Assembly (NCBI RefSeq): GCF_023055435.1
Contig: NW_025964235.1
Span: forward strand, 1,178,001-1,242,000
From: Haliotis rufescens
Lineage: Eukaryota
Reading direction: 5' to 3'
DNA: 64,000 bases
Position 1 is the stretch's first letter, and each line of letters opens with the position of its first letter. Position numbers and translations under genes: made by a program. The notes beneath the pieces were generated by a model. The model saw nothing but the letters and a program-made list of their open reading frames with translations, was not told where the DNA came from and searched no databases. Of the stretch, positions 26,082 to 47,770 are shown piece after piece.

Positions 26082-26471
26082 CTATGATACCACACAACTC
26101 TTTTTCTTGGTATCCACGGGAACGTACTTGTCCATATACGCGAGAGCCGCGCTTTCAAACACTCTCCGTAGTCCCACACAGCTCTTGGCCGAGCACTCCA
26201 CGTAGCCGAACGCGCCCAGTTCCTCCGCCTTCCGCATCCCTTCCTCGACAGGGATGGACCGACTCTTGGGGTCAGCGTCCTTGGTAATGGTGTTCCTGGC
26301 GTCCGTCTTTGTGCCCACGAGGAGGAAGGGGGCAGTGGGGGAGTAGTCCCGGATCTCTGGCACCCAGTGGTGCTCCACGCGATCCAGGGAGGACGGGTTG
26401 GTGACGTCATAGCACACCAAGTATACGTCAGTGTTGTGGCATACCTTCTCCCGCAGCTTCTGGTACTCGTC
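26082..26471 (-). CDS. Atypical Rho-family GTPase gene B, exon 3 (terminal)
   Basis: Acceptor TTTGCAG|GAC. DEYQKLR...NTDVYLVCYDV...WVPEIR...LLVGTKTD (G4)...YVECSAK (G5)...KKKSCVVS* (polybasic region plus CaaX). Confidence 0.93.
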   Translation of the reverse strand, partial: DEYQKLREKVCHNTDVYLVCYDVTNPSSLDRVEHHWVPEIRDYSPTAPFLLVGTKTDARNTITKDADPKSRSIPVEEGMRKAEELGAFGYVECSAKSCVGLRRVFESAALAYMDKYVPVDTKKKSCVVS

Positions 26472-26714
26472 CTGCAAACGTGGACCATAGCAGTTATTAT
26501 AAATATTTATCACACGCATATGGTATCACTTTTAGAATACATTCAAAGTCTTACCTAGGAGTGAGTGAGGGAGTCAGTTGGGTAGACAATATTACAGTTA
26601 TATCACGGCGTGTCAGCCTAATGCGGAAGGGAAGTTCAAAGAACCGCAGACGTTTACCATTTAAATTGGTGAAAGCCACAAGGACCGATCTAGTGCTGCC
26701 GACACATGGGTGCG

Positions 26715-27997
26715 GAAGAGTCTGTCACGAACCCGCTTCTGTGGAATCTGTGACGAACCCGCCCATGGAGGATGTGACCAACCCGCCCCTGAGGAATCTG
26801 TGACCAACCCGCTTCTGAGGAATCTGTCACGAACCCGCCCATGGAAGAATCTGTGACCAACCCGCCCCTGGGGAATCTGTGACCAACCCCGCTCCTGAGG
26901 AATCTGTGACCAACCCGCTTCTGAGGAATCTGTCACGAACCCGCCCATGGAGGAATCTGTGACCAACCCGCCCCTGGGGAATCTGTGACGAACCCGCTTC
27001 TAAGGAATCTGACACGAACCCCTCCTGAGTAATCTGTGACGAACCCACCTATGAGGAATCTGCGGCGAACCCACCTATGCGGAATCTGCGGCGAACCCGC
27101 TCCTGAGGAATCTGTGTTGAACACACCCCTGAGGAATCTGTGGCGAACCCGCCTATGAGGAATCCGTGACGAACCCACCCATGAGGAATCTGTGGCGAAC
27201 CCGCCTATGAGGAATCCGTGACGAACCCGCCCCTGAGGAAACTGTGGCGAACACACCCCTGAGGAATCCCTGGCGAACCCACCCATGAGGAATCTGTGGC
27301 GAACCCGCCTATGAGGAATCTGTGGCGAACCCGCCCCTGAGGAAACTGTGGCGAACACACCCCTGAGGAATCCCTGGCGAACCCGCCCCTGAGGAATCCG
27401 TGACGAACCCGCCCCTGAGGAATCCGTGACGAACCCGCCCCTGAGGAATCTGTGGCGAACCCGCCCCTGAGGAAACTGTGGCGAACACACCCCTGAGGAA
27501 TCCGTGACGAACACACCCATGAGGAATCTGTGGCGAACCCACCCATGAGGAATCTGTGACGAACCCACCCATGAGGAATCTGTGGCGAACCCACCCATGA
27601 GGAATCTGTGGCGAACCCACCCATGAGGAATCTGTGGCGAACCCACCCATGAGGAATCCGTGACGAACCCGCCCCTGAGGAAACTGTGGCGAACACACCC
27701 CTGAGGAATCCCTGGCGAACCCGCCCCTGAGGAATCCGTGACGAACCCGCCTCTGAGGAATCTGTGGCGAACCCGCCTGTGAGGAATCTGTGACCAACCC
27801 ACCCATGAGGAATCCCTGGCGAACCCACCCATAAGGAATCTGCGGCGAACCCGCTCCTGAGGAAACTGTGGCGAACCCACCCCTAAAGGAATCTGTGGCG
27901 AACCCGCCTTTGAGGAATCTGTGGCGAACCCGCCTCTGAGGAATCTGTGGCGAACCCGCCTGTGAGGAATCTGTGGCGAACCCGCCTGTGAGGAATC
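26715..27997. repeat. Minisatellite, 26-bp unit GAGGAATCTGTGGCGAACCCGCCCCT (intron 2 of Rho gene B)
   Basis: Direct inspection. Confidence 0.97.
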
Positions 27998-29279
27998 CCA
28001 TAGCTTTATCCCAAGGCCACCCTCATCACATAGCTTCATCCTCAGTCCACCCCATGACAACTCAATGAGACTGTTTCTTATATCATGGCATATAGCACGT
28101 TAATGCAATAAATATAAAAAAATAAACTCCAACTGCTTGAACATTTACACCTTGACGATCAAGCGTCAGTTATATTCCTACAGCGTCTTTCTGGACATAA
28201 ACGAAGTTTCAGTGAAGTCTATGTGGGAGCCTCTATTCCATGTGTTACGCAGAGATATGTATTGACGTGAACTCCCTGTTCACCGCGGAACGACCGTCAA
28301 GAAATATGCTGCTGTTCAACTCGGGCGTCAGCTTATTTTCTTAAAGGGGACAACTGTTATTTCAAGCGTCCTATATCCTAGCGAGACAACACTCCTTCAA
28401 GTCTGCCATGGAGGGGTTGTATAGGTTGCCGAGTGGTCGATACGTTGGCATGCCCTGCCTGTGACCTGGGTTTGATTTCCATCATTGGAAAAACAGCGAC
28501 TCACTCACTCACTCACTCTGCCGAGGGGCAAGCTCCGCCTTATAGACCCTCACACCAACAACTCTGTTACTCAACCAAAGTGCACGTGATTGACAGGCCG
28601 TGTTGCCCACCTGTCGTGCAGCCATCGAGGCCGTGTATAAGTGACGATGGCATGTAAATGAGGGACTAGACTAGACTACGGCCTGTCATCAATCTCCACA
28701 ACATCATCACTGTGCAATAGCATGACACATTACCAGCATACCGCCGCGTTCTCACCCACAGTCACCAATACCTGATTGACACGGGTTGTAACACCCGTCA
28801 GCCGCTAACGAGCTGTTGTAAACTTGACTGCTAACTCGTAAAAGGTACTGTAGAATGCCTTTGAAATTCCGTACACACAAACACATATATTTGCACCTTA
28901 TATAGCACATGTGTTTATGTTGCCTCTGTTGTGTATTGATATCTCAGGGTTTGGGACTTGATTTGGTTATGAATTATTCAGATTCCGGTGGGCCGTGCCT
29001 GAGTTTGTTTACTTGGTGCAGTATGTTGATACGTTATGACGTACAGCAGGTATCATAAACCTTGAATCGACTGGCTAAATAAACTCTGTGCACTGGACAT
29101 TCCGGCACGGTGTATGTAGACAGGAATTTGTTGTGGTAGTCAGTTTAAACATGCAATAATTTCAAGCAGTCTGTACATGCCTTTGATCTAGGTCGTCGAA
29201 TGAAAGGGGAGATAACTGAGACAGATGAACATGTCCGCCGTGCGAGGCGGGCTGATGAATGCGCTCATGACGACATCGC

Positions 29280-29455
29280 AGCTGTTCAGGTAATTGATTC
29301 TGGCATCAATGGTTCACGAAGTGTTTATGAAATACTAAAGCTGGGTATATTTTTTAAGTACACTACGTGTGATATTGTCCGGATTCCAGCGCATGTTGGG
29401 CTGTATGGAAATGAGATGGCAGACCCAAAATCCAAATCTGGCTTGCAAAATCCTT
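29280..29455 (+). pseudogene. Relic RNase H domain of a non-LTR retrotransposon
   Basis: IVRIPAHVGLYGNEMADPKSKSG matches the W-[IV]-P-[AS]-H-x-G-x-x-G-N-E-x-A-D-x-x-A-K RNase H C-terminal motif. Confidence 0.75.
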
Positions 29456-29509
29456 ACGTAATAATATCTGATTTCAGACCCGAACCAAACGATTTCGACT
29501 TCATTTTAA

Positions 29510-29670
29510 TGAGTGAGAATGGTTTTACGCCTCTTTAGCAATATTCAAGCAATATAACGGCGGGGAACACCAGAAATGGGCTTCAAACATTGTACCCATG
29601 TGGGGAATCGAACCCGGGTCTTCGGCGTGACGAGCGAACGCTTTAACCACTGGGCTACCCCACCGCCCCG
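29510..29670 (-). mobile_element. SINE family A
   Basis: Near-identical to the reverse complement of the 52097 copy. Confidence 0.92.
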
Positions 29671-31467
29671 ACAGGAATATGAAAGAATCGGGTTCCCTTA
29701 ACTTCTTTTGAGTAGTATATACCGTACCCATCCAGGTGTTAATCAGGACTATATCACTGATATGTCCGAAGTTTCACTGCATCAATGGCTACTTGACGAG
29801 TAGCTAGACTTTTACCTCGACATGCTGAGTGGGTGGCCAAGTGGGCCGAGTGTTCGCTTATCCTGCTTACCTCTGAGTTTGTATACCCCACGTGGGAAAA
29901 TTTATATGGATTTGTTTCTGTCCTGGGAGAAGCCGTCGGACTGTTAAGGTGGGGACACTAATTTACTTATTCACTCAATTATGAAATTTGAGCAGCTAAT
30001 CAAGTTTCACATGGTATTCACATCCCGTTCAATGTTTGACCACGCTCTCTGCGCTGTTGGCGTCAAACAACCAACGTGTTTGATTGGCGTGCGTCACAAC
30101 TCGCATAGATGTTTATAATACAACAACACTGTTTGAACCGAATAAAAAATAACAAATGTATCATTGAAACGTGCATGATCCCAGCACAGTCAGCGGTTAT
30201 CGCTCCTCTCGTCGTGTTTCCAATTACATGTATTTTCGTGAACTTTCAAATACGTCGGGTGGACATGATTGGCGCGTTCGATGCTGAAGGGGAGGGTGGA
30301 GGACGCGCGCGTGTGTGTGTATCTGTGTGTGTGCGTTCGTATGTGTGTCTGTGTGTGTGTCGTATGTTCATAATTTAACCAGTGAAATACGTTACATTTT
30401 TATATAACCGAGGAAAACCATGCAGACAAAGCGTTTGCCTTGCCCCAAGTCGCTACTGAATGATAAATCCGCGGATGATCATTTCCACATAGACTTGTGC
30501 AAGTCTAGTCAACATGTTCTTGTATGTCAACAAGTTACGCTTCTCACGGGACAATGTTGCCGTTGTACAGTCCACAGCTTTAGATACCAGAGTGAGTGAG
30601 TATGGTTTTACGCCGCCTTTAGCTAACGCGCGAGGAAGGTATAAGTGTTTAGGTGCCACGACTGATATAATTCAATAACATGATAGTAACCGAAATGATA
30701 TAAATCGTAATCAAATATAATGAAAATGAAATATCGACGTTAATCGTTCGAGACAAGCGAACTACCGATGATAAACCATAACGCCCTTCATATCGTGGTG
30801 AAAGGGACATCGTCTCAAACGATAAGTACACTTTATGTATAACTCGACAAATAGCTATAAATAAACCTTTCCTTGAACTGAAAATGATGGTATCCATTGT
30901 TGTCAGTATATTCAATAACAAGTTGTTTGCCATCGCTCCTCGAAATGACAGATAGCGTTATGAAATAAATGCGCCCGTTATTTAAAAAAACCCTATCAAT
31001 TACTGGTGTCTGCGTATCGTGATTCCTTAAACTTCCTAAGTGCAGACAAAAGGTGGGGTTAGATCTTTCCCCCATTAGTCTATCGCAAGAGGCGGTTTAG
31101 TGTGGGCGTTGCTGATGATATCAATCACTGGTTTGTCTGTTTGAGACTCGACTGTTTACAGGCGGCCGTCATATTGCCAACATGAAACAAACAACATGTT
31201 ATTTAGGCCCAGTCACGCCTTTGACATGGGGTTCGGGGGAGTATGGACAGGGATGAGTGTTGTGACGTTGTCATAGTAACCATGAAGTGTTCATTCACAT
31301 TACTGAAGGTTTCGGTTGCTGCTGTCTCTACCGGAAGGAAATGTTAGACTAGAAAACGGATTACTGATAAATATATTCAAAAAATCACTGCGTAAACAGA
31401 ATGCGGAAGTGGTGTAATCACCACTATACTGTTATGCCTCATTCGTCACAGACCAGGGGTAACAAGC

Positions 31468-34097
31468 TATACTATGGTATATACCATGGATACCCTGGTA
31501 TATTCAATGGATGCACTGTTATATACTATGGATACCCTGTTATATGCTATGGATACCCTGTTATATACTATGGATACCCTATTATAGGCTCTGGATACCC
31601 TGGTATATTCAATGGATACCCTGTTATATTCTATTGATACCCTGTTATATGCTATGGATACCCTGTTATATGCTATGGATACCCTATTATAGGCTCTGGA
31701 TACCCTGGTATATTCAATGGATACCCTGTTATATACTATTAAACCTTTTATATGCTATGGATACCCTGTTATATACTATGGACACCCTGTTATATGCTAT
31801 GGATACCCTGGTATATGCTATGGATACCCTGCTATATACTATGGATACCCTGTTATATAATATGGATAACCTGCCATTTACTGGGAAAGATTTCACTAAT
31901 GATACCCTGCCATATATGATGAATATCCTGCTATATGTTATGGGTACCCAGCTATATACTATGGATATCCTGCTATATACTATGGATACCCTGATGTCTA
32001 CTATGGATACCCTGATATATACTACGGATACCCTGCTATATACTATGGATACCCTGTTCTATGCTATGGATACCCTGCTATATACTCTGGATTCCCTGCT
32101 ATATACTATGGATACCCTGATATATACTATGGATACCCTGCTATATACTATGGATACCCTGATGTCTACTATGGATACCCTGATATATACTACGGATACC
32201 CTGCTAGTTACTATGGATACCCTGCTATATGTTATGGATACCCTGCTATATACTCTTGATTCCATGCTATATACTATACACTGATATATAATATGGATAC
32301 GCTGATATATATACTACGGATACTCTGGTGTATACTGGGGATACCCTGCTATATACTATGGATGCCCTGACATTTACTGGGAAAGATTTCACTAATGATA
32401 TCCTGCCAAATATGATGAATATCCTGCTATATGCTATGGATACCCTGTTATATACCAACGGACACCCTGCTATACACAACGGACACCCTGTTATACACAA
32501 CGGACAACCTGCTTTACACAACGGACACCCTGTTATACACAACGGACACCCTGTTATACACAACGGACACCCTGTTATACACAACGGACACCCTGTTATA
32601 CACAACGGACAACCTGCTTTACACAACGGACACCCTGCTATACACAACGGACACCCTGTTATACACTACGGACACCCTGTTATACACTACGGACACCCTG
32701 TTATACACAACGGACACCCTGTTATACACAACAGACACCCTGTTATACACAACGGACACCCTGCTATACACAACGGACACCCTGTTATACACAACGGACA
32801 CCCTGTTATACACAACGGACAACCTGCTTTACACAACGGACACCCTGTTATACACAACGGACACCCTGCTATACACAACGGACACCCTGCTATACACAAC
32901 GGACACCCTGCTATACACAACGGACACCATGTTATACACTACGGACACCCTGTTATACACAACGGACACCCTGTTATACACAACGGACACCCTGTTATAC
33001 ACAACGGACACCCTGTTATACACAACGGACACCCTGTTATACACAACGGACACCATGTTATACACAACGGACACCCTGTTATACACTACGGACACCCTGC
33101 TATAAACAACGGACACCCTGCTATACACAACGGACACCCTGTTTTACACTACGGACAACCTGCTTTACACAACGGACACCCTGTTATACACAACGGACAC
33201 CCTGTTATACACAACGGACACCCTGTTATACACAACGGACACCCTGTTATACACTACGGACACCCTGCTATACACAACGGACACCCTGTTATACACAACG
33301 GACACCCTGTTATACACAACGGACAACCTGCTTTACACAACGGACACCCTGTTATACACAACGGACACCCTGTTATACACAACGGACACCCTGTTATACA
33401 CAACGGACACCCTGTTATACACTACGGACACCCTGTTATACACATTGGACACTCTGTTATACACAACGGACACCCTGTTATACACAACGGACACCCTGCT
33501 ATACACAACGGACACCCTGTTATACACAACGGACACCCTGTTATACACAACGGACAACCTGCTTTACACAACGGACACCCTGTTATACACAACGGACACC
33601 CTGTTATACACAACGGACACCCTGTTATACACAACGGACACCCTGTTATACACTACGGACACCCTGTTATACACATTGGACACTCTGTTATACACAACGG
33701 ACACCCTGTTATACACAACGGACACCCTGTTATACACAACGGACACCCTGTTATACACAACGGACACCCTGTTATACACTACGGACACCCTGTTATACAC
33801 AACGGACACCCTGTTATACACAACGGACACCCTGCTATACACAACGGACACCCTGCTATACACAACGGACACCCTGTTATACACAACGGACACCCTGTTA
33901 TACACAACGGACACCCTGTTATACACAACGGACACCCTGCTATACACAACGGACACCCTGTTATACACAACGGACACCCTGTTATACACTACGGACACCC
34001 TGCTATAAACAACGGACACCCTGCTATACACAACGGACACCCTGTTTTACACTACGGACACCCTGTTATACACAACGGACACCCTGCTACACACAAC
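31468..34097. repeat. Compound 21-bp minisatellite (CTATGGATACCCTGTTATATA changing to CAACGGACACCCTGTTATACA), intron 2 of Rho gene B
   Basis: Two related unit types with a switch near 32455; ends a few nt from the exon 2 donor. Confidence 0.97.
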
Positions 34098-34101
34098 CTA
34101 C

Positions 34102-34187
34102 CAGTCCAACTGTGTCCACCAGATTCAGGGAAACGGAAGTCCCCTCATATTCAAACTTGACCGGCTCCCGAGTCACGTGGGCAAACT
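34102..34187 (-). CDS. Atypical Rho-family GTPase gene B, exon 2
   Basis: Acceptor TATTTCAG|, 86 nt, (E)FAHVTREPVKFEYEGTSVSLNLVDTVGL, donor |GTAGGT. Phases 1 and 0 join exons 1 and 3 in frame. G3 motif is DTVGL. Confidence 0.88.
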
Positions 34188-34686
34188 CTGAAATACAGAT
34201 ATTTATACAATGACAAGTAGGATGAATTGCCAAACTGTCAATCAATGTGTCGCCTTCCAATAGCCGCGTCTGAAGAACGGGTCTAGCGGCCGTGAGACAG
34301 ACACACTCGTGACTCTCTCCAGATTAAGTCCAAAAAGGATATTCAATTATTTTCATTTATAGACAGTTTTTCGAGGCGATAAACAACCCTGATATATTGG
34401 TATATGAAAATATGAAAGAAATTAGATCACCTGTATTAAACTACCTTTAATACGCCCCATGTATGGATGCGGTAACTGCTCGCTCATACTTTTGCATGAC
34501 TTTTCATTAGGTTTAGAAAGAAGGTATTTCGCTGTGTGTGGGCGTGGCTGCATTCGCATGTGACACTGTATGATAAATTGGCTTGCATGCGCAGTTTCTA
34601 AAGTTAATTCAGTGAGTAATGTAACGCCTTAAATATTATAATTAAAAAATGACATTATATGACATTCAATTCTGTATTGTAAATAA

Positions 34687-35000
34687 CCGTCTCAGTGGTT
34701 TAGTGGAGAGAGCGTCTGCTCGGAGAGAGGAGATCCCTAGCCGCTTCTAGTCAAACCAAAAGATGGTACTTGTTGTTACACTACCTGGATATCGGCATTA
34801 AGGAGCAAAAACAAGGACAGGTCGGCTGGGAGTCAGTATTATGTGCCTGAGTGGGGTATTCATGTTAAAATGTGGCGTGGTATCTCCGTGGGCTGAGACT
34901 GGCATTAGTCCGGACTAGTGCAAGCGGCTTCGCACACATCCATACACGCCGCTCGCTATATAAGTTTAAGAACGTGACGTTACTCCCTATTTCATTTCAC
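34687..35000 (+). mobile_element. SINE family C copy
   Basis: Homologous to 57110-57465. Confidence 0.8.
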
Positions 35001-37135
35001 GGTAAATAGGACAATTAGGAACAAGTATAATTTGCATAAGGCTCGCATTTTGGACTTGTTCCTCATTTTATATTCCTACTTACCCCAACGATGTGTAAAC
35101 ATTAATCTCTTTATACATAACAATTACATAAAAGAAACATTTTCTTGTGAATAGAACCTGGATTATGTTTTAGATTTGTCAAGTTCCTAAATCCGAAGCC
35201 GAGAACAAGCTATAACGTGGCTAGGACTGTGGTTCTGTTTGTGTTACCAAATACTTTATTAAAGTTTCACACACACGTCTCATATTTCACTTAGAAATTA
35301 ACTGCCATTTCCTCGAAGTATGTCGGTAACAAGGCACCATTGTCCTTACAAAATGACATCCTGTTTTGCATATCGCCCTATCATTAAAAACTCAGGAATG
35401 CTTTGGGTCACGTGTTTATGTAATTGGCTCTATGTTCCGTGGTGCACGCGACAGTTTCCAGCTGGGTGCGAGTGCCACGCGCCACAGACAACCTAGGCCA
35501 GCCGTGTTTGGAAGATAAGGAGACGTCCCCCGATGTGTGGAGCTTCCTTTGCTGCAAGCCCCCACAACAGGTGGCCTTCGCCGGAAACAACTGTCGTCTG
35601 TTGTCACCCAAATTGGCGGGAATGCTATCAGATCGCTAAATGGAACGCTCTCTGTGTTATCCCTAATATTGATTGAGGTCGTCGGGTAATAAATTGTTAT
35701 CCAACAGGAAATCGTTTTCAATCTGCAGCTGCGTTAGATGACGCAACATGTGACAGGTAATTAGATGACAAGTGGCACCTCGGAATACACAAACAACAGA
35801 TGAACTTATTTACATCTTGTGTTGTCACTGAGCGATGATTTTAACGGAGTACAAGGAAATTCCGTATCTAATCTGTCAGCTTAATCTCATGATGATAAAT
35901 AAAGTTGTTTCCTGTTTTTAGAGGACTTTTTTTGATAATGCAACAAAAATATGTTGAATCAACACCTATTTACATTTGTCGAAACTCTTATCGTGTTACA
36001 TTCTGCTGTGCGTCAAGCCATGCATGTGTTAACAGACTTATCTGCCCTAGACACTGCTGTGATATGCACACCACATAATATGCCCATTATGTATGAACAA
36101 TATGACAGTTTGTTACAAAACCTGTTACTCATGCAGCGGGGTTTATCCGATTCGGTGTTATTAGGCCGTGTTACATGAGCTGGTCGACCAATAGCACTTC
36201 ACGCTATTAGCATTCCTATAGGCACAGAGGAAATACTAGGCAATGGTGGTCACACTTAGATCCAGTTGCTATGGGAAAGACCTGGTTCTCCACTGGTCAC
36301 GGATTGTCACCACGTGTAGGGTGTTATAATATATATTTCCTAAACATAAAACAATAGTAAAACATGCCACGTGGTATGCAGGATTAATGCAACATGTCAA
36401 CGAGTGCCTCGTTTGCAGCTGAACGATACAACGTGAGTGTTTTTGTACCTATAAACAATGGCTTTTCAACAAGTGACACTTTAACTTTTGACACAATCAA
36501 CAGCATAATGAATAAATCGTATATTTTAATAGGCAAGATGGGGCCGCCAGAGATCTATAGTGCAGACGTGTTAACGCAGATATAAAACTGCCATAAGATT
36601 ACGTAGATACAAATAAATCAATATAGAGGTGTTGTGATATTTATCAGTCAATACCTCCCCACATGGCCCTCCGACAAGCTGTGCCAGCCTTTATCCTACT
36701 TCACTAGCTTTGATCTTATTACTATTCACAATACGTCTGCAGTTGTACCTATATGCTAATGAATGTTTGCAGACGGGGAAGTTTATAAAGCGTTACATTT
36801 TTCTGACGGGATTTTTCTCCGCTGAGTTATTGATGCGTGTTTTGTATATAATTATGTGGACCTGTTTATGGCGTGTATCACGCTAGGCGCGGCTTCCTTA
36901 ATGACTGGTATACTTAAGAGAGCTTAACTCAGCATGTTTCTACTGCCTGTATATGTTGACAGAAAGGGTCAATTAATATTTTGTATGATAGTTTTAAGTA
37001 ATTACCTATCGATAGTACATATTTAACTATTAACTATACGACATTGTCAAAGGGGGCTTTGAATAATGATAAACGTTGAGGAAACATGTAGAAAGTAAGA
37101 TGGTTAAATCTTGAGAAAGAAGTGTAGAAACTTAC

Positions 37136-37271
37136 CGTTGTGCCAGTCCATAGATCCTGGGAGGTAGGACTCCGGGTATTTTCCTGTCAGAAAAGTAAGC
37201 ATGAGGCATGTTTTGCCCACTCCCCCGTCCCCCACCGCCGTGCACGTGACCGTGTACTGCTTGCCTGCCAT
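37136..37271 (-). CDS. Atypical Rho-family GTPase gene B, exon 1
   Basis: Manual translation MAGKQYTVTCTAVGDGGVGKTCLMLTFLTGKYPESYLPGSMDWHN with P-loop GDGGVGKT. Phase-1 donor G|GTAAGT at the same position as gene A. Not in the ORF track. Confidence 0.92.
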
Positions 37272-38377: not shown

Positions 38378-39286
38378 CGTGAATCACATCTACATGTATC
38401 CTGATTGAGATAGTACAGTATCGCCACTGATATCCATCCCAGTGTTTTTCAATAAAAACGACCACGCCCCCTTTTACAAGAAAGTGGTGTCAACACGAGG
38501 GACTGTGTTTGGTTGGTACACATGCGCCCTATTCAAGTTTATGACGCGAGTACCTGCGGCCTGGGAAAGTTGAACGAGTTGAAGAGTGTCGAGAGACATA
38601 CATACAGATACGCTGACAGAAAGAAACAGGTTGAAAAAAGTTTGTTTGTACACAACATGCGTGGGGAGAGGTTTTCCCAAAATAGATTCTGCAATATTCC
38701 TGATGGGAATGAGAGGCGAGGACAGCTTGTGAATGTCGCGAACCTTACTAAAACAATGCCTCTTAATGAGAGTTTGAAGAGGAAGGATGTCATTTATAAA
38801 CTGCTAAGCCGGTATAATGAGACGGAATGAAAGGCGATTTAATTTGAACGAAACGTCACAACACTGAATACGGCCCAGGAGATTAAAGTCGGCATGAAGG
38901 GATTATACGACGCTTACAACATAATATTGGCGGACATTGTCATACTCGGGTTAAGTACTCATACAGATCCTAAAATCCGTTTATGTCAGTTTTTATTGAA
39001 GTAATTATTTTGACCTAAGAGTTAAGTAGCGAGCGTAGGATAACTAAGCAGGGAGCCGAGCAGCATGTTGCTATACTGACATCTAAACACCATCATCCGT
39101 GTAAGCAGACTCTGTACCCTCATCTTGTTCTCATGTATACACTGTAGGGCGGAGTACCCCAGACACATCACAGCGGCAGGGAGGGGCGTAGATAGGCCCT
39201 AGAGAAGGCTAAGTCCAATACCGCTGCAAGACATGTGTTGGTAAAGATTGTAAACTGAATGAAACTAAGTGATGGCTTCATATTTG

Positions 39287-40935
39287 TCATCCCGCCGTGA
39301 TATACCTGTCATACCGTCGGGATATATGTCATGCCGTCATGATATATCTGTCATACCGTCGGGATATACCTGTTATACCGTCGTGATATATGTCATGCCG
39401 CCATGATATATCTGTCATACCGTCGTGATATACCTGTTATACCGTCGTGATATATGTCATGCCGTCATGATATATCTGTCATACCGTCGGGATATACCTG
39501 TTATACCGTCGTGATATATGTCATGCCGCCATGATATATCTGTCATACCGTCGTGATATACCTGTTATACCGTCGTGATATATGTCATGCCGTCATGATA
39601 TATCTGTCATACCGTCGTGATATACCTGTCATACAGCCATGATATACCTGTCATACAGCCGTGATATATCTGTCATACCGTCGCGATATATTTGTCATAC
39701 CGCCGTGATATACCTGTCATACAGCCGTGATATATCTGTCATACCGTCGTGATATATCTGTCATACCGTCGTGATATATCTGTCATACTGTCGTGATATA
39801 TATGTCATACCGTCGTGATATACCTGTCATACCGTCGTGATATACCTGTCATACAGCCATGATATACCTGTCATACAGCCGTGATATATCTGTCATACCG
39901 TCGTGATATACCTGTCATACAGCCATGATATATCTGTCATACCGTCGTGGTATATATCTGTCATACCGTCGTGATATACCTGTCATACCGTCGTGGTTTA
40001 TATCTGTCATACCGTCGTGATATAACTGTCATACCGTCGTGATATACCTGTCATACAGCCATGATTTACCTGTCATACAGCCGTGATATATGTCATACAG
40101 CCATGATATACCTGTCATACTGTCGTGATATATCTGTCATACCGTCGTGATATACCTGTCATACCGTCGTGATATACCTGTCATACAGCCATGATATACC
40201 TGTCATACCGCCGTGATATTTCTGTCATACCTTCGTGATATACCTCTCATACATTCGTGATATACCTGCCATACCGTCGTGATATACCTGTCATACCGCC
40301 GTGATATACCTGTCATACAACTGTGATATACCTGTCATACCGTTGTGATATATCTCTCATACCGCCGTGCTATATCCTTCGGACAGTCGTGGTATACCTG
40401 TCATACAACCATGATATAACTGTCATACCACCGTGATATATGTGTCATACCGCTGTGAAATATCTGTCGGACACCTGTGATATGAACACCCAATGCCATT
40501 TCAAAAGTGGTCAAATGTAACAAATGTTATATTTGGGATAACACTTTGTAAGTAAAGTACAGATTCTAGTACTGTTTTTGGTTGAGTCCCGTCTAGGATT
40601 CGAACCCTAACTGCCAGACTAGTGAGGCACCTAATCGCCAGCACACAAAGCCAGCGATCTAACCCACTCAGGCGATTACCACCAACTAATCTGTGGTTAG
40701 GTGCCTCACTCTGGCTGTGTTGGTTCGAATCCCGGCCGGGACTCAACCCAAAACAGGTACGAGAATCTGTACTTTACTAAGTGTTGTCCCAAATATAACA
40801 TTTGTTACAGCTGTGGTATTTTTGTCATACCGTCGTGATGGAACTATCGGACGGTCGTGCTATATCTGTCATACCGCTGTAATATATATCAGTCCTGCTA
40901 TATCTATCATACCGTCGTATCTGTCCCTGATATAT
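39287..40935. repeat. Minisatellite, 22-bp unit GATATACCTGTCATACCGTCGT, interrupted at about 40490-40810 by an insertion
   Basis: Direct inspection; degenerate units resume after 40810. Confidence 0.95.
40516..40809. mobile_element. Foldback element with two inverted tRNA-B-box-containing arms
   Basis: TGTAACAAATGTTATATTTGGGA ... TCCCAAATATAACATTTGTTACA, with GGATTCGAACC / GGTTCGAATCC in the arms. Related pieces at 60300-60560 and 60900-61130. Confidence 0.75.
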
Positions 40936-41046
40936 TAGTCATGTCTCTCAAATGCAGGTGATGACTGTAACACAACACAGGTCGTTCACTCATCACGTGT
41001 AAAGAACAAATACAGAAGGCAGAAACCCTTCATGGTTTAATCATAG

Positions 41047-42596
41047 ACGATACTAAAACAGGTGACAGTGACGTCGATACTGACACAGGTGACAGTGACG
41101 TCGATACTAAAACATGTTACAGTGACGTCGATACTAAAACATGTTACAGGGACGTCGATACTAAAACATGTTACAATGACGTCGATACTAGCACAGGTGA
41201 CAATGACGTCGATACTAAAACAGGTGGCAATGACGTCGATACTAAAACAGGTGACAGTGACGTCGATACTGATACAGGTGACAGTGACGTCGATACTAAA
41301 ACGGGTGACAGTGACGTCGATACTAAAACATGTTACAGTGACGTCGATACTAAAACAGGTGACAGTGACGTCGATACTAAAACATGTTACAGTGATGTCG
41401 ATACTAAAACAGATGACAGTGACGTCGATACTAAAACAGATGACAGTGACGTCGATACTAGCACAGGTGACAGTGGCGTCGATACTAGCACAGGTGACAG
41501 TGACGTCGATACTAAAACATGTTACAGTGACGTCGATACTAAAACAGATGACAGTGACGTCGATACTAGCACAGGTGACAGTGACGTCGATACTAGCACA
41601 GGTGACAGTGACGTCGATACTAAAACATGTTACAGTGACGTCGATACTAAAACAGATGACAGTGACGTCGATACTAAAACAGATGACAGTGACGTCGATA
41701 CTAGCACAGGTTACAGTGACGTCGATACTGGGACAGGTGGCAGTGACGTCGATACTAGCACAGGTGACAGTGACGTCGATACTAAAACAGATGACAGTGA
41801 CGTCGATACTAAAACAGATGACAGTGACGTCGATACCAAAACAGGTGACAGTGACGTCGATACTAGCACATGTTACAGTGACGTCGATACTAGCACAGAT
41901 GACAGTGACGTCGATACTAGCACAGGTGACAGTGACGTCGATAGTAAAACAGATGACAGTGACGTCGATACTAGCACATGTTACAGTGACGTCGATACTA
42001 GCACAGGTGGCAGTGACGTCGATACTAAAACAGATGACAGTGACGTCGATACCAAAACAGGTGACAGTGACGTCGATACTAAAACAGGTGACAGTGACGT
42101 CGATACTAGCACATGTTAGAGTGACGTCGATACTAGCACAGATGACAGTGACGTCGATACTAGCACAGGTGACAGTGACGTCGATAGTAAAACAGATGAC
42201 AGTGACGTCGATACTAGCACATGTTACAGTGACGTCGATACTAGCACAGGTGGCAGTGACGTCGATACTAACACAGGTGACAGTGACGTCGATACAAACA
42301 CAAGTGACAGTGACGTCGATACTGGGACAGGTGACAGTGACGTCGATACTGACACAGGTGACAGTGACGTCGATACACACACAGGTGACAGTGACGTCGA
42401 TACTGGGACGGGTGACAGTGATGTCGATACTGATACAGGTTACAGTGACATCGATACAAACACAGGTGACAGTGACGTCGATACTGGGACGGGTGACAGT
42501 GACGTCGATACTAACACAGGTGACAGTGACGTCGATACTGATACAAGTTACATCGATACTGACAGGTTACAATGACGTCGATACTGACGCAGGTTA
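41047..42596. repeat. Minisatellite, 27-bp unit GACGTCGATACTAAAACAGGTGACAGT
   Basis: Direct inspection. Confidence 0.97.
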
Positions 42597-43105
42597 CCGA
42601 GTCGTCGGCGTCACACCAGATAAAAATACACTTGATAAAATCAATGCGTAAGACCTATTTTGCAACATTTTGGAACAATGTTTCAACTTGTTGCATTTTG
42701 AATGTTTGTTTGATGAAGGGTATCTAATACCATATATATATAATAAACCGTAAACTGCTGCAGTCCAGCATTACATGCAAAAGGTTGATACATTGTACTT
42801 CGGATATTACGAACTGGTGTTAGGAATTCATTTATACCGAAGTGATCTACAATGAAGGTTCAGTTTGAAACAGAGGGAGCTCCTGGAAGCAAATCCAGCT
42901 CCTCATCCTGGAAGCAGGCCCAGACACAGATCCTGGAAGCCAATCCAGACACCGATCCTCAATCATCTAATTGTATTTACACGTCATTGACCTTGCAGCG
43001 GCAGGGTCGTGGGGTCAACTTCCTCCTTACCAGGAAGGGCTGTTGAATGTCACTATTTTATGTGTCGTTTCTTGATAATGTAACAGAATCAGTGGACAAT
43101 CTATT

Positions 43106-43528
43106 TCATAGTATCACACATCTACAACAGTCTTTCTCTGGCACATTGTGACCTCCACCAACGCGGCTTTTCTTTGTCATACAAGCTGCGTGCGCTGCTG
43201 TGAGAAACACCGACCTGACGCCATCGTTATTGAGAGATGAACACTCCACATAGTCCACGACCTTCAATTCACGTGCCAACCTCTGACCTTCCTCGTGGAG
43301 CACGGGCTTTTTACCGATCTCTGCTAAGCCCGACTTGACGACAGAATTGTTCCGGAGGTCAAGTTTGGTGCCAACGACAATTATTGGGATCTCAGGCTGG
43401 GCAGACCGGATTTCCGGCATCCATTTTTCCCGCACATTTTCAAAGGATTCTGGACAGGAAATGTCGAAGCAGACGACAAACACGTCAGTGGTCATGTACT
43501 CCAGCAACCGTAGAGACAAGGAGCTGTC
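43106..43528 (-). CDS. Atypical Rho-family GTPase gene C, exon 3 (terminal)
   Basis: Acceptor TCTTTTGTAG|GAC. TDVFVVCFDI...SFENVREKWMPEIR...VVGTKLDLR (G4), Rho insert, YVECSSL (G5), ending DCCRCVIL* (CaaX). Confidence 0.93.
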   Translation of the reverse strand, partial: DSSLSLRLLEYMTTDVFVVCFDISCPESFENVREKWMPEIRSAQPEIPIIVVGTKLDLRNNSVVKSGLAEIGKKPVLHEEGQRLARELKVVDYVECSSLNNDGVRSVFLTAAHAACMTKKSRVGGGHNVPEKDCCRCVIL

Positions 43529-44226
43529 CTACAAAAGACAAGAAACCCGATACAGCAAAGGATGCTACATAATCTGTATCATTTACTTAAAGAATATAAA
43601 TATAAATTGCGTTTCCCAAAAGAATATCATTTTTAAAAGAACAATGATCATATGTCGAGGGTATCCTTGGTCGGGGTCAGATTACGTCCCCAGAACCTAG
43701 TGCTTGCCCTAAGAGCAGACTAAATTGGGGATTGGTTGGTCAGGGTCTGTAGCTTGATCCGTTGATCATGTTATCCAACAGCGGGCTGTCTGGCCCTGAC
43801 TCAAATATTTACAGGGCGTCGTAATATAGCTTGGATGACGCGGTTTAAAACAACATTCACCAAGGGCGCCAATTTGGGTGGCAGGCAGCCCACGGATGAT
43901 GTCACTAAGAGTAAGTGCGTGTCGTGAGAGAGGGGCCTATCCTTCATGTAATGTAATATCATATGTTTTCTTGAAGAGTTTTAAAAAAGTCATCTGCGTC
44001 TTACTTTTCTTTTTCAAAATAAACAAAGGCATGTGAGGATTTTGAGCTGTGCAGGCGAGTGAAACTGACACTCGCTCTCAGACACAGATCTAACGTGTTG
44101 GCGTTCGGGACCATGACGACTTCAGCTAACGGGTCAACCATTCTATATAACCAACAGCACCCTGCAAATCTAAGGCTCGATTTGGGGTTTATGACAAGGG
44201 GTTGAGGGGATGTCCGTGGCACTCAC

Positions 44227-44315
44227 CAGTCCCAGCGTGTCGGTGAAGTCCAGATCGTAACGTTGTCCGTCCACCTGGATGTTGGGGTAGGTGCTCTGGT
44301 TGAAACCGGTTCCAG
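44227..44315 (-). CDS. Atypical Rho-family GTPase gene C, exon 2
   Basis: Acceptor TTCTTGTTCCAG|, 89 nt, (A)GTGFNQSTYPNIQVDGQRYDLDFTDTLGL, donor |GTGAGT. In frame with both flanking exons. Confidence 0.9.
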
Positions 44316-46053
44316 CTGGAACAAGAAACGGAAGTGTCATATAAGGGTATATCAGCTGTTGAATTGAGGCACTCGTCACCACTCTCATATGTCCGTAACT
44401 TATAGGAGGGGGGCCTTCGGCTTGTCCCGGAATGGCACGTGTTGGTCACGAATGGAAATGTAAAACTTCATCGGTTTGAGGAGAGTGAAAGTTGGGGCCT
44501 ACATATTACATATATTGAACGTGTATTCATTAGTTTTGAAGGATTATTGATATCTATTGCAACTGTGAAGATAAGTTCCCGTAGAAACATCCTTTATCAT
44601 GTTTATACAGGTATATATATCAGATAGCTACGCTGTAAATCGCAAAGAACGATGAAGAACGAAGCGTGGTTTATTTCGCGATAAAACATTGTTCTCTCAT
44701 GACGTCATTTTTGGAGATTTGATTATGCGCTCGCAACTTGATGACGTCATATATTGGACGACATTTTTGAGAGGGAAGTATCAAGTGAGTTGTTCCCAAT
44801 AGATGTAGTTGGGGTAAGCAGATAAGCGTCGAACGACCGCATGCAGAAGTGGGAGAGGCATGGTAATCGGTATAAGGAGAAAAGGTACAGATAATCGACG
44901 TGAGGATTTTGAGAATATGCGGAAAATACCAATACCAAACCCGCCTGTTCATAAAATGGACTTGTCCGACATTGCGGAGGTCGGATTCTATTCAGGGAGT
45001 CATCATTTTTAAAATACGGGTACATCTTTTTAAAGCTTGTACATTTTATGACCTGACTGTACTGTTCGCCCCTCATGGTTTATTGTCCCCGCAGTGTTTT
45101 ATTGTACGATATCCAGCTTCCCACGATTCACCATAACGTGATCTGTTATCATGTAATACAAAATAAACGTTCTCTATAAGCATTTTCGTATGTCGGTGAT
45201 GATTAAATCATGTACAATGTGATGTTTTCAAAAAAACATTTTTGTTGAGAATTCTGAATCGACACATACAATTTAAGTCTAGAAGAAAAAAAAACTTCAC
45301 AAAAGTTATAGGTTCAAATGTGCCTAACAAGGGATTGCACGTAAGTTTTCAAAACCAAAATGATGTTTTTATATAACAACGCTCGAGCCCGATGCGTTGA
45401 TGTTTGCTCTCCCAAACACTGATGTCTTTGTTTTCAAATTCTAAGGACATCAAAATTGTAAAATGGTGGAGAATCTGGTTTTGTGGAAACCCTAACTGCT
45501 TGATCTGATGTGGAATATGCCGCAGTTGTAATTGTTCTAGCCAAAGTAAACAAGGCGGGCTCGGCCGACTACAGTGGAAATGTCACAGCATCGGCGGGCG
45601 GCTGTCAATTGAGAAGGCCAGAGGGACATTATAGCACAACATATTAACATATCATTTGATGTCGGTGGTTAATAACCGTTAATGTACAGAGTGACCCACT
45701 ACATAATCACACTGGTTTAATATCAGCTGTTTTGGGGAATTGGATAACTGTTATACAAGCAACGTGATGGATCGACGCCTCTGTCATCCGTCTGCCATAT
45801 GAGATATGCTTGCGAGAGGCAGCTTGCTGATTGTGTGGTAGCAAGGCAAAGGGAAACGGTCGAGTAGCTTCTAAATGGGACATTCTAGTGGTGTGCATCA
45901 CACATCAACACACGTGATGTAACATCCGGGCAGGAGAGGAATATGGTAAACTATCGTCTTCATTCAACACATGCTCGCCCAGGGTCGCACTTGTTCGGAT
46001 ATAACGAACCCAGGACTGGTCCTGGTAAACTTGTATGGAAGGTCTCATACTAA

Positions 46054-47053
46054 TGCCATATACCATAGCCATATACCACAGTCATATACCATAGCCATAT
46101 ACCATAGCCATAAACCACAGTCATACACTATAGCGATATACCATAGTCATATACCATGGTCATACACCACAGTCATACACCACAGTCATATACCATAGCC
46201 ATATACCATAGTCATATACCATAGCGACATACCATAGCCATATACCATAGTCATATATCATGGTCATATACCATAGCGACATACCATAGCCATATACCAT
46301 AGTTATATACCATAGCAATATACCATAGTCATACACCATAGTCATAAACCATAGTCATATACCATACCGATATACCATAGTCATAAACTATAGTCATATA
46401 CCATAGACATACACTATAGTCATATACCATAGCAATATACCATAGTCATATACCATAGTCATATACCATAGTCATACATCATAGTCATACACCATAGTCA
46501 TATACCATAGTCATATACCATAGTCATATACCATACCGATATACCATAGTCATATACCATAGTCATACACCATAGTCATACACCATAGTCATATACCATA
46601 GTCATATACCATGGTCATACACCATAGGCATACACCATAGTCAAATACCATAGTCATATACCATGGTCATACACCATAGTAATACACTATACTCATATAC
46701 CATAGCCATATACCATAGCAATATACCATAGCTATATACCATAGTCATACACCATAGCCATATACCATAGTTATTCACAATAGCCATATACCATACTTAT
46801 ACATCATAGTCATACACCATTGTCATATACCATAGACACACACCACAGTCATACATTATAGCCATAAACCACAGTCATACACCATAGCCATATACCATAG
46901 CCATAAACCACAGTCATACACCATAGCCATATACCATAGCCATATACCATAGTCATATACCATAGCCATACACCATAGCCATAAACCATAGTCACACACC
47001 ATAGCCATATCCCACAGTCATTCGTTAACCACAGGCATATATCATAGCCATAA
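46054..47053. repeat. Minisatellite, 13-bp unit CCATAGTCATATA (intron 1 of Rho gene C)
   Basis: Direct inspection. Confidence 0.96.
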
Positions 47054-47226
47054 AATTGTCGTGAGGTCATCGAACCGTGACATCATATAACACACCGAAC
47101 ATCAGGGTTGATAGTACAGCTTGTGTATGATACAGCAGACGTATACGTTTATGATTGGACAACAGAACTGCACCCGACAGAGAGAGGGTTCAGGCCAAAT
47201 GAGTCACCACATATTTGCTTCTTGCA

Positions 47227-47616
47227 ACTGATGGAATACCAAATCAAACTGGGTATCCGTCTACATACGCATAGTGTCTAGACATCCCAAACTGGGTGCG
47301 TTTCACTCAGTGACATAACATATTAGACCAAGGACCGAGCTACTGATGGCATACCACGTCAGACTGGGTATCCGTCTACATACGCATAGGGGCTAGACAG
47401 CCTTAGACTGGGTACGCGTCTACTCAGTGACTTAAGACATTACACCAAGGACCGAGCTACTGATGACATGCCACTTCAGACTGGGTATCCGTCTACATAC
47501 GCATAGGGTCTAGACAGCCTTAGACTGGGTACGCGTCTACTCAGTGACTTAAGACATTACACCAAGGACCGAGCAACAGATGGCATACCCATCAGACTGG
47601 GTATCCGTCTACTCAC
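47227..47616. repeat. Tandem repeat, about 116 bp x 3.3, starting at the exon 1 donor of Rho gene C
   Basis: ACTGGGTATCCGTCTAC at 47248, 47363, 47480 and 47596. Confidence 0.92.
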
Positions 47617-47770
47617 CAAGATGCCACTCGAACGACGCCGGGACGCATGCTGGGTACTTCTTAGTGACGTAAGTCAGCAACAAACACGTCTTGCCCACTT
47701 GACTGTCTCCCACCACGGTCACCTTCAAGGTCCTGTGTTTGCTAACTCTCCGCTTGCCAGAGCTTGACAT
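47617..47770 (-). CDS. Atypical Rho-family GTPase gene C, exon 1
   Basis: Manual translation MSSSGKRRVSKHRTLKVTVVGDSQVGKTCLLLTYVTKKYPACVPASFEWHL. Phase-1 donor G|GTGAGT. A possible acceptor (TTGCCAG|ACAATG) just before the ATG suggests an upstream non-coding exon. Confidence 0.92.

What the first reader, a model, noticed from the sequence alone, without database searches (positions are those of the whole stretch)
26082..47770. Two intact tandem Rho paralogues that naturally carry Q61L: a candidate undescribed GTPase-dead subfamily
Seen: spliced genes B and C are open and full length, keep G1 (GKT), G4 (TKxD), G5 (ECSA/ECSS) and a CaaX box, but read DTVGL and DTLGL instead of DTAGQ. Gene C also has the P-loop GDSQVGKT (G12S). 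Established: Q61L is the classic hydrolysis-dead mutation of Ras/Rac/Cdc42. The known natural GTPase-deficient Rho proteins (Rnd1-3, RhoH, RhoBTB) alter positions 12/59/61, but Rnd and RhoH use Ser or Asn at 61, not Leu. Inference: B and C are very divergent from each other yet share Leu61, which points to a conserved, independently evolved constitutively GTP-bound (or pseudo-GTPase) clade regulated by expression or localisation rather than GEF/GAP cycling.
Basis: partly seen in the sequence, partly recalled or inferred. Interest (0 to 1): 0.82.

Follow-up and report, generated by a model that had tools for sequence, protein, structure and literature searches.

The report
Molluscan Rho proteins with broken switch
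Two neighbouring abalone genes encode real, expressed Rho-type signalling proteins that keep their nucleotide-binding pocket but have lost the two residues that make such proteins act as timed on/off switches, and they belong to an old, apparently undescribed mollusc-wide subfamily.

Summary
Genes B (window 37271-26082, minus strand) and C (47770-43106, minus strand) are intact three-exon Rho genes with GT-AG introns. They read DTVGL and DTLGL where Rho proteins read DTAGQ. Their translations equal the Haliotis rufescens RefSeq proteins XP_046364302.1 and XP_046364300.2, which are annotated only as 'cdc42 homolog' or 'cdc42-like'. Transcript contigs from four runs join both of C's junctions exactly.

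B and C do belong to a conserved clade. B-type orthologues occur in vetigastropods, a neomphaline, caenogastropods and heterobranchs. C-type occurs in Haliotis and Gigantopelta. A bivalve sister group is also present. The clade has 99/97 support inside the Rac/Cdc42 group, outside the RhoA-like sequences sampled, RhoU/V and Cdc42 proper.

Leu61 is not the hallmark. Position 61 reads L, M, T or Q across 16 members. The constant features are:
- loss of Thr35 (Gly, Ala or Ser);
- a 9-17 residue insert after switch I;
- unchanged nucleotide-binding residues.

The Leu in B and C is most simply inherited, not independently evolved.

The likely function is a prenylated, nucleotide-binding Rho that does not cycle. 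This is inferred and has no biochemical test. I rate it a new variant of a known kind, of moderate interest.

The parts
37136..37271 (-). Gene B exon 1: ATG, P-loop GDGGVGKT, degenerate switch I (YLPGSMDWHN). A phase-1 intron follows.
   Evidence: DNA read; frame and junctions; Pfam Ras E 4.3e-6; identical to RefSeq P0265.
37155..37157 (-). Gene B codon 39 (Gly), the position of Thr35 in Ras/Cdc42.
   Evidence: Alignment to Cdc42.
34102..34187 (-). Gene B exon 2: the 9-residue insert (EFAHVTREP...), beta2-beta3, and the ending DTVGL.
   Evidence: acceptor tatttcag|AG, donor CTG|gtaggt.
34102..34104 (-). Gene B codon 74, CTG (Leu), at the Gln61 position. It is the last codon of exon 2.
26082..26471 (-). 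Gene B exon 3: DEYQKLR..., G4 TKTD, a Rho insert 3 residues shorter than in Cdc42, G5 ECSAK, CaaX CVVS, stop.
   Evidence: Pfam Ras E 5.5e-20; 92% identical to the H. asinina orthologue.
47617..47770 (-). Gene C exon 1: ATG, P-loop GDSQVGKT (Ser12, Gln13), switch I CVPASFEWHL. A phase-1 intron follows.
   Evidence: the junction 47617->44315 is seen in transcript contigs.
47636..47638 (-). Gene C codon 45 (Ala), the position of Thr35.
44227..44315 (-). Gene C exon 2: the 10-residue insert, beta2-beta3, and the ending DTLGL.
   Evidence: both flanking junctions are seen in contigs of 4 runs.
44227..44229 (-). Gene C codon 81, CTG (Leu), at the Gln61 position. It is the last codon of exon 2.
   Evidence: no variant here in any of the 4 runs.
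43106..43528 (-). Gene C exon 3: DSSLSLR..., G4 TKLD, full-length Rho insert, G5 ECSSL, CaaX CVIL, stop.
   Evidence: Pfam Ras E 4e-20; 89% identical to H. asinina.
42900..43105 (-). Gene C 3' UTR. It is covered by the same transcript contigs and runs on beyond 42900.
   Evidence: table 8.
47771..47900 (-). Gene C 5' UTR. It is contiguous with exon 1 in the transcript contigs.
   Evidence: table 8.
4377..4509 (-). Context: exon 1 of gene A, the canonical tandem neighbour ([18 protein letters not shown]). Its phase-1 intron lies after codon 41, as in B and C. The rest of the gene lies outside the window.
   Evidence: its last exon is at C457:1158505-1158900.

Best explanation
B and C are two functional tandem paralogues in Haliotis rufescens. 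They belong to an old molluscan subfamily of atypical Rho GTPases that arose inside the Rac/Cdc42 group.

Shown:
- The genes are intact.
- C is transcribed and spliced as modelled.
- Orthologues of B span the major gastropod groups.
- C-type occurs in Haliotis and Gigantopelta.
- A bivalve group is sister to both.
- Every member keeps the residues that hold the guanine nucleotide and Mg2+ (P-loop GxxxxGK[T/S], Asp57, Gly60, xKxD, SA[K/L]) and a C-terminal CaaX box.
- Every member has lost Thr35 and carries an insert after switch I.
- Positions 12 and 61 vary freely (G/S/V at 12; L/M/T/Q at 61).

Inferred:
- The proteins are prenylated and membrane-anchored. From the established rule for the last CaaX residue, I predict farnesyl for B (CVVS) and geranylgeranyl for C (CVIL).
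- They bind guanine nucleotide but do not run the normal GTPase cycle. Without Gln61 they cannot position the attacking water. Without Thr35 switch I cannot close on the gamma-phosphate and Mg2+.
- They would then act as non-cycling Rho proteins, either locked in the GTP form or blind to nucleotide state.
- Their output would be set by expression, lipid anchoring and turnover, and would go through a remodelled effector face. That face is the S-x-[D/E]-W-H segment plus a short predicted helix, in place of the canonical CRIB/GAP/GEF-binding switch I.
For: - Gene structure and frames.
- Identity with RefSeq models. The same models exist in four Haliotis species.
- Spliced transcripts of C in 4 runs from 3 studies. 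No intronless genomic copy of B or C exists.
- Orthologues: Gigantopelta, Batillaria, Babylonia, Nucella, Elysia, Biomphalaria and Mactra.
- Several B-type orthologues are complete ORFs on 1.0-2.2 kb Logan/JGI contigs. I take these to be spliced transcripts.
- Careful ML tree: B 100/99, C 100/98, bivalve X 100/100, B+C+X 99/97, inside the Rac/Cdc42 group at 100/100.
- The grouping survives when only the columns after residue 61 are used (88 SH-aLRT).
- Key-site table: 16 of 16 keep G10, G15, K16, T/S17, D57, G60, K116, D118 and S158; 0 of 16 keep T35.
- AF2 model of B: pLDDT 89.3, pTM 0.87. Its best structural matches are Cdc42, Rac1 and RhoA, with TM about 0.88-0.90.
- Variants of C between related abalones: 4 synonymous and 3 non-synonymous over about 154 S and 509 N sites. 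The crude pN/pS is about 0.23.
- Established knowledge: Gly12 and Gln61 are needed for hydrolysis, and Rnd and RhoH, which lack them, are GTPase-deficient (PMC8305018).
Against: - No biochemical data exist. Bound nucleotide and hydrolysis are inferred from residues only.
- Two B-type orthologues keep or regained Gln61. The bivalve group has Thr61, as in Rap, which is a working switch served by a GAP that supplies the catalytic residue (my knowledge). So a non-Gln at 61 does not prove a dead enzyme.
- B keeps Gly12.
- The pN/pS figure rests on 7 differences.
- B, C and X all sit on long branches, so part of the support for joining them could be long-branch attraction. The shared insert and intron positions argue against that.
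- No Rnd, RhoH, RhoBTB or RhoD/F reference sequence was available for the tree.
Confidence: 0.6

Rival explanations
1. B and C are still working switches. A dedicated GAP supplies the catalytic residue in trans, as RapGAP does for Rap, which naturally has Thr61. The remodelled switch I still senses GTP through other contacts. The clade would then be a regulated Rho branch with private GEFs and GAPs.
For: - Position 61 is Thr in the bivalve members and Gln in two heterobranch members.
- All nucleotide-binding residues and Gly60 are kept.
- B keeps Gly12.
- The RapGAP mechanism is cited from my own knowledge.
Against: - Thr35 is lost in 16 of 16 members. Rap, Rnd and RhoH retain it (my knowledge).
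- Positions 12 and 61 vary among close relatives (G/S/V and L/M/T/Q). That looks like relaxed constraint, not a tuned catalytic site.
- Two members carry Val12.
Confidence: 0.17
2. B and C are nucleotide-free or GDP-only pseudoGTPases. Their G domain would be purely a structural scaffold, for example a decoy for GDI, GEFs or prenyl-binding chaperones, with the nucleotide playing no part.
For: - Loss of the Mg2+/gamma-phosphate ligand Thr35 and a rebuilt switch I.
- B's Rho insert is shortened by 3 residues.
Against: G10, G15, K16, T/S17, D57, G60, K116, D118 and S158 are invariant across gastropods and bivalves. That is hard to explain if no nucleotide is bound.
Confidence: 0.15
3. B and C are decaying duplicates, pseudogenes in the making, of the canonical neighbour gene A. 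The odd residues would simply be neutral damage.
For: - They lie in tandem with a canonical paralogue.
- They evolve faster than Cdc42: B is 94% and C 91% identical between H. rufescens and H. asinina.
Against: - The frames are open in four Haliotis species and in other gastropod orders.
- C is transcribed and correctly spliced.
- Nucleotide-binding motifs and the CaaX box are conserved across the clade.
- Synonymous differences exceed non-synonymous ones per site.
Confidence: 0.03
4. The Leu is an artefact of a wrongly placed splice junction, and the real mRNA encodes Gln61. An in-frame CAG sits just upstream of exon 3 in B.
For: The frame upstream of B's exon 3 reads ...LQ|DEY, because the acceptor is ttgcag.
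Against: - That CAG is the acceptor AG itself.
- For C, transcript contigs show the exact CTG|GAC junction in 4 runs.
- For B, the RefSeq models of four Haliotis species and of Gigantopelta use the same junction.
- Contiguous B-type ORFs from other gastropods read G[L/M/T/Q]DEY.
Confidence: 0.02

Closest known systems
Rnd1-3 (RhoE) and RhoH, the classical GTPase-deficient Rho proteins
   Same: - Rho fold with a CaaX end.
- Natural loss of Gln61, and in C also of Gly12. C's P-loop GDSQVGKT resembles Rnd3's GDSQCGKT (recalled from memory).
- Expected to be regulated by expression and localisation, not by GEF/GAP cycling (PMC8305018).
   Different: - Rnd and RhoH keep Thr35 and a canonical switch I, and use Ser or Asn at 61 (my knowledge). 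This clade loses Thr35, has an insert after switch I, and reads L/M/T/Q at 61.
- The clade sits inside the Rac/Cdc42 group, apart from the RhoA-like sequences sampled. By my own knowledge Rnd is allied to RhoA.
- Rnd and RhoH are not among the 60 best PDB sequence matches.
- No Rnd or RhoH sequence was in the tree.
Cdc42 / TC10 (RhoQ/J) / Rac
   Same: - Best sequence matches in the PDB: Cdc42 141-149 bits, TC10 140, RhoG 145, Rac1 135-139.
- Best structural matches.
- RefSeq names the proteins 'cdc42 homolog'.
- Same three-exon structure as the canonical neighbour gene A.
   Different: - Only about 40-45% identity.
- Thr35, Gln61 and the effector loop YVPTVFDNY are replaced.
- A 9-10 residue insert is present.
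- G4 is TKxD, not Cdc42's TQxD.
- The clade lies outside the Cdc42 clade and the A-type/TC10 clade in the tree.
Engineered or oncogenic Q61L and G12V mutants of Ras, Rac and Cdc42
   Same: - The same residues occur naturally: Leu61 in 9 of 16 members and Val12 in Babylonia and Nucella.
- The top PDB sequence hit of B is 1nf3_A; the printed alignment of that chain reads Leu at the Gln61 position.
   Different: Those mutants keep Thr35 and a normal switch I, so they are locked 'on' towards normal effectors. Here the effector face itself is rebuilt.
Ruditapes philippinarum A-type paralogues (P0226, P0291, P0350)
   Same: Gly35 in all three, Ala12, and Leu, Met or Gln at 61.
   Different: They have no insert. 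They nest inside the canonical A-type/TC10-like clade (100/96 and 100/99). I read them as a separate, recent and convergent loss in one clam lineage.

Membership tests
Rho family of Ras-like small GTPases | G domain with motifs G1-G5 | tested here: met
   Pfam PF00071 matches every exon searched. G1, G3 (DTxG), G4 (TKxD) and G5 (ECSA/ECSS) were read directly. The AF2 model matches Cdc42, Rac and RhoA at TM 0.88-0.90.
Rho family of Ras-like small GTPases | Rho insert between G4 and G5 | tested here: met
   The insert is present at full length in C and is 3 residues shorter in B in alignments to Cdc42. In the model it has lower confidence (pLDDT 74-81).
Rho family of Ras-like small GTPases | C-terminal CaaX prenylation box | tested here: met
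   CVVS in B and CVIL in C. It is conserved in all 16 clade members. Prenylation itself was not tested.
Canonical Cdc42 (the RefSeq name) | Thr35, Gln61, effector loop YVPTVFDNY, G4 TQxD, and membership of the Cdc42 clade | tested here: not met
   All four sequence features differ. The clade lies outside the Cdc42 clade in the tree.
Rnd subfamily | Substitutions at positions 12 and 61 | tested here: inconclusive
   C has Ser12 and Leu61. B keeps Gly12 and has Leu61. Both positions vary within the clade.
Rnd subfamily | Phylogenetic affinity to RhoA/B/C, with a canonical switch I that keeps the Thr | tested here: not met
   The clade is inside the Rac/Cdc42 group (100/100), apart from the RhoA-like rows. 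Thr35 is lost. Rnd is not among the 60 best PDB matches. Caveats: no Rnd sequence was in the tree, and the link of Rnd to RhoA is my own knowledge.
RhoH | Vertebrate haematopoietic Rho with Asn61 and Ser12 | not tested
   No RhoH sequence was available by reference. RhoH is reported as vertebrate-specific (PMC4669188). An ESM Atlas RhoH cluster appeared among generic Rho hits at a score of 0.97, which does not discriminate.
RhoU/V (Wrch/Chp) | Membership of the RhoU/V clade | tested here: not met
   The RhoU/V rows and the abalone's own RhoU-like gene form a separate clade (100/98).
Nucleotide-binding but catalytically inactive pseudoGTPase (functional class) | Binds GTP or GDP but has no hydrolysis | not testable with these tools
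   This is predicted from the conserved G1, G4 and G5 motifs together with lost Thr35 and Gln61. It needs recombinant protein.

The most novel reading that the evidence does not exclude
A Rho subfamily shared by gastropods and bivalves gave up both the gamma-phosphate sensor (Thr35) and the catalytic Gln61. It also inserted a short helix where switch I meets beta2, yet kept nucleotide binding and prenylation. That would make it a new class of lipid-anchored Rho pseudo-switch with a private effector interface. The same loss of Thr35, Gly12 and Gln61 has re-evolved independently in clam paralogues of the canonical neighbour gene. This hints at a recurrent adaptive route, not decay.
Probability: 0.4. 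Interest if true: 0.7.

Novelty: new variant of a known kind. Interest (0 to 1): 0.55.

Why it matters
Atypical, non-cycling Rho proteins such as Rnd, RhoH and RhoBTB are known almost only from vertebrates, and by my knowledge those keep Thr35. This clade would be an invertebrate counterpart that arose separately from the Rac/Cdc42 side.

It offers a natural experiment on what a small GTPase can do once both its timer (Gln61, and sometimes Gly12) and its state sensor (Thr35) are gone while the nucleotide pocket stays under constraint. Within the clade, position 61 reads L, M, T or Q and position 12 reads G, S or V. A convergent case exists in Ruditapes. Together these give ready-made comparative material.

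There is also a practical point. Automated annotation calls these proteins 'cdc42 homolog', 'Rac1' or even 'Ras association domain-containing protein 2'. That would mislead pathway inference in abalone and other mollusc transcriptome studies.

Tried and rejected
- **Alternative splice sites that would restore Gln61:** rejected. The upstream CAG in B is the acceptor AG itself, and C's junction is seen in RNA contigs.
- **Pseudogene or retrocopy:** rejected. The frames are open in many species, and the genome holds no intronless copy.
- **The bivalve 'Rnd' of Li et al. 2015 as the same clade:** rejected. That protein is reported without a CaaX box and at 8.9-22.6% similarity (PMC4669188).
- **The look-up of encoding contigs:** I could fetch no orthologous CDS, so I could not compute a proper dN/dS. 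Only the 7 variants seen in gene C's RNA contigs were classified.
- **Read laying and the look-up of sequencing runs:** each was capped at one call.
- **ESM Atlas:** it returned only generic Rho clusters.
- **Papers:** the pseudoGTPase review PMC7544640 is not held, and PMC13236570 had nothing on residues 35 or 61.
- I re-ran it using locus coordinates only.
- **Joined models:** the joined spliced proteins were never sent to a search tool. Searches used single exons by reference or database ids identical to the models. Exons were joined only inside local scripts, to check frames and compare with RefSeq.

Full report
**What is in the window**

The window is C457:1178001-1242000 of a 1.33-Gb genome. 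Three Rho-family genes lie on the minus strand.

- Gene C has exons 47617-47770, 44227-44315 and 43106-43528.
- Gene B has exons 37136-37271, 34102-34187 and 26082-26471.
- Gene A has its first exon at 4377-4509. Its last exon lies outside the window, at C457:1158505-1158900.

All four introns of B and C are GT-AG. B encodes 203 residues and C encodes 221.

In both genes the codon at the Gln61 position is CTG and is the last codon of exon 2. It is followed at once by a strong donor (CTG|gtaggt in B, CTG|gtgagt in C), and exon 3 begins GAC. In B the in-frame 'LQ' just upstream of exon 3 is only the acceptor ttgcag.

**Independent support for the models**

I searched exon by exon, by reference. 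These searches returned RefSeq proteins of Haliotis.

The locally joined translations are letter-for-letter identical to H. rufescens XP_046364302.1 (P0265, 'cdc42 homolog') and XP_046364300.2 (P0268, 'cell division control protein 42-like'). So the window is red abalone, and both genes are already annotated with this exact structure. The joined models were never sent to a search tool; the database ids were used instead.

For gene C, one transcript contig in each of four runs joins the exons exactly. The runs carry three organism labels and come from three studies. The contigs join 43527/8 to 44226/7 and 44315 to 47617, with CT..AC intron ends on the plus strand. They extend into both UTRs, and none shows a variant at the Leu codon 44227-44229. 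The genome holds no intronless copy of B or C, so these contigs come from spliced RNA.

Its support is threefold:
- identical models in four Haliotis species and in Gigantopelta;
- complete B-type ORFs on 1.0-2.2 kb Logan and JGI contigs from other gastropods, which I take to be spliced transcripts;
- canonical splice signals.

**What the proteins are**

Both are closest to Cdc42 in the PDB (141 and 149 bits). TC10, RhoG, Rac1, RhoU and RhoA/B follow only a little lower. Rnd and RhoH are not among the best 60 matches.

B and C are 40% identical to each other. Besides Leu61, both lack Thr35 (Gly39 in B, Ala45 in C). Both replace the effector loop YVPTVFDNY by xPGSMDWH or xPASFEWH. Both carry 9-10 extra residues right after it.

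An AlphaFold2 model of B is confident (pLDDT 89.3, pTM 0.87). It shows a normal Rho fold, with TM 0.88-0.90 to Cdc42, Rac1 and RhoA. The insert forms a short helix (residues 45-51) ahead of beta2.

**Relatives**

*B-type proteins* occur in:
- H. rufescens, H. asinina, H. cracherodii and H. rubra;
- Gigantopelta aegis (Neomphalina);
- Batillaria, Babylonia and Nucella (Caenogastropoda);
- Elysia and Biomphalaria (Heterobranchia);
- several unnamed transcript contigs.

*C-type proteins* occur in the four Haliotis species and in Gigantopelta. In Gigantopelta the B and C accession numbers are consecutive, so the tandem pair appears to be conserved.

A bivalve pair groups with them. It consists of Mactra antiquata KAL4237469.1 and a Logan transcript.

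In a careful ML tree of 57 Rho sequences (LG+C20+F+G4 by PMSF) the supports are:

| Clade | Support (UFBoot/SH-aLRT) |
|---|---|
| B | 100/99 |
| C | 100/98 |
| Bivalve pair (X) | 100/100 |
| B+C | 89/73 |
| B+C+X | 99/97 |
| Rac/Cdc42 supergroup containing them | 100/100 |

The clade lies outside the RhoA-like rows, the RhoU/V clade (100/98), Cdc42 proper and the clade of gene A. Gene A groups with canonical bivalve proteins and a TC10-like sequence.

Using only the columns after residue 61, B, C and X still group (88 SH-aLRT). This leaves out switch I, the insert and position 61. The insert columns were filled in only 16 of 57 rows, so I infer they fell under the 30% filter in both trees.

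A, B and C share both intron positions and phases: phase 1 after codon 41 and phase 0 after codon 61. This fits an origin by tandem duplication. The insert starts exactly at the exon 1/2 boundary, so an upstream shift of the acceptor is a plausible origin. That is inference.

**What is conserved and what is not (Cdc42 numbering, 16 clade members)**

| Position | State in the 16 members |
|---|---|
| Gly10, Gly15, Lys16, Thr/Ser17, Asp57, Gly60, Lys116, Asp118, Ser158 | invariant |
| CaaX cysteine | invariant |
| Thr35 | never Thr: Gly 11, Ala 3, Ser 2 |
| 61 | Leu 9, Met 2, Thr 3, Gln 2 |
| 12 | Gly 7, Ser 7, Val 2 |
| Insert after switch I | +9 in B, +10 in C, +14 to +17 in bivalves |

The clade therefore shows constraint on the nucleotide pocket and on lipid anchoring. 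It shows none on the two classical catalytic positions, and switch I is replaced wholesale.

Leu61 is the commonest state and most parsimoniously ancestral for B+C. It is not a fixed signature. The two Gln61 heterobranch sequences are best read as one-step reversions or retentions.

Between related abalones, gene C shows 4 synonymous and 3 non-synonymous differences. The crude pN/pS is about 0.23, and the counts are too small for a test.

**Mechanism**

Established knowledge says Gln61 and Gly12 are needed for hydrolysis. Rho proteins that lack them (Rnd, RhoH) are GTPase-deficient and stay GTP-bound (PMC8305018). Thr35 couples switch I to Mg2+ and the gamma-phosphate (my knowledge of Ras-family structures).

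From this and the conservation pattern, I infer that B and C bind guanine nucleotide, are prenylated and do not cycle. Whether they behave as permanently 'on' proteins or as proteins blind to nucleotide state cannot be decided here. In either case the canonical effector, GAP and GEF surface is gone, so private partners are expected.

A minority alternative is a Rap-like arrangement in which a dedicated GAP supplies the catalytic residue.

**Comparison and novelty**

The clade works like Rnd and RhoH but is not a member of either:
- it loses Thr35 and gains an insert;
- it sits on the Rac/Cdc42 side of the tree;
- it is restricted, so far, to molluscs.

[quoted passage not shown] Its 'Rnd' has no CaaX box and under 23% similarity, so it is not this clade (PMC4669188). 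Other literature searches found no description.

Natural Leu61 is not unique to the clade. Three Ruditapes paralogues of the canonical A-type gene have Gly35 and Ala12, with Leu, Met or Gln at 61, and no insert. They nest inside the A-type clade, which I read as a convergent event. Leu61 also occurs in Rho paralogues of the fungi Dentiscutata and Blyttiomyces and in one ENA fusion model.

**Limits**

- No Rnd, RhoH, RhoBTB, RhoD/F or verified Mtl/MIG-2 sequence could be put in the tree.
- The taxon range beyond gastropods and bivalves is unknown.
- All functional statements are inference.

**Verdict**

These are real genes of an undescribed but already annotated atypical Rho subfamily. Its hallmark is a lost Thr35 plus an insert, with Leu61 as a frequent but not defining state.

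Noticed in passing
window 4377-4509 (-) and C457:1158505-1158900: Gene A is the third tandem Rho gene. It is canonical ([18 protein letters not shown]). Its first exon is 93% identical, and its last exon 64%, to a Dreissena protein. It groups with a bivalve-wide Cdc42/TC10-like paralogue (100/96). Exon 2, with the expected DTAGQ, was not located.
   Followed up: partly
P0226, P0291, P0350 (Ruditapes philippinarum): Clam paralogues of the canonical A-type gene have independently lost Thr35 (Gly) and Gly12 (Ala), and read Leu, Met or Gln at 61, without the insert. P0291 and P0350 list the same longest-contig length (534,256 bp), so they may share a contig. This looks like convergence with the B/C clade.
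   Followed up: partly
P0277 (Babylonia areolata), P0281 (Nucella lapillus): These B-type orthologues naturally read GDVGVGKT. They carry Val at position 12, the classic oncogenic G12V state, together with Leu61.
   Followed up: no
window 44403-45237 (intron 1 of gene C): Very many short RNA-run contigs map here at 90-95% identity, with summed word depths up to about 10,000, many variants and many loose ends. The stretch behaves like a dispersed, transcribed repeat and not like part of gene C.
   Followed up: no
window 22002-23044, 23564-24544, 26721-27997, 31478-34097, 39285-40468, 41048-42539, 46057-47021, 47227-47612: Eight large minisatellite arrays, with periods of 13-117 bp and up to 125 copies, fill the introns and spacers of the Rho cluster. 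One ends 5 bases from the donor of gene B's exon 2. Another (47227-47612) ends 5 bases from the donor of gene C's exon 1. They produce long spurious ORFs.
   Followed up: partly
G000 C68:10.02-10.22 Mb; C445:198-218 kb; C223:51.2-51.5 Mb: The abalone genome holds further Rho/Ras-like arrays. About ten RhoA-like last exons lie on C68, two of them with an in-frame TAG in the match. Three Rho-like copies lie on C445. About nine more distant copies lie on C223.
   Followed up: no
P0121 (Elysia marginata GFS14474.1), P0286 (Biomphalaria pfeifferi): These B-type orthologues are misnamed in public records, as 'Ras association domain-containing protein 2' and 'ras-related protein Rac1, partial'.
   Followed up: no
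P0113, P0116, P0118, P0119: Other Rho paralogues lack Gln61. Leu61 occurs in Dentiscutata erythropus, Blyttiomyces sp. and an unnamed ENA three-domain model that also has a Lys61 domain. Val61 occurs in a Batillaria RhoA-like protein. All of them keep Thr35.
   Followed up: no
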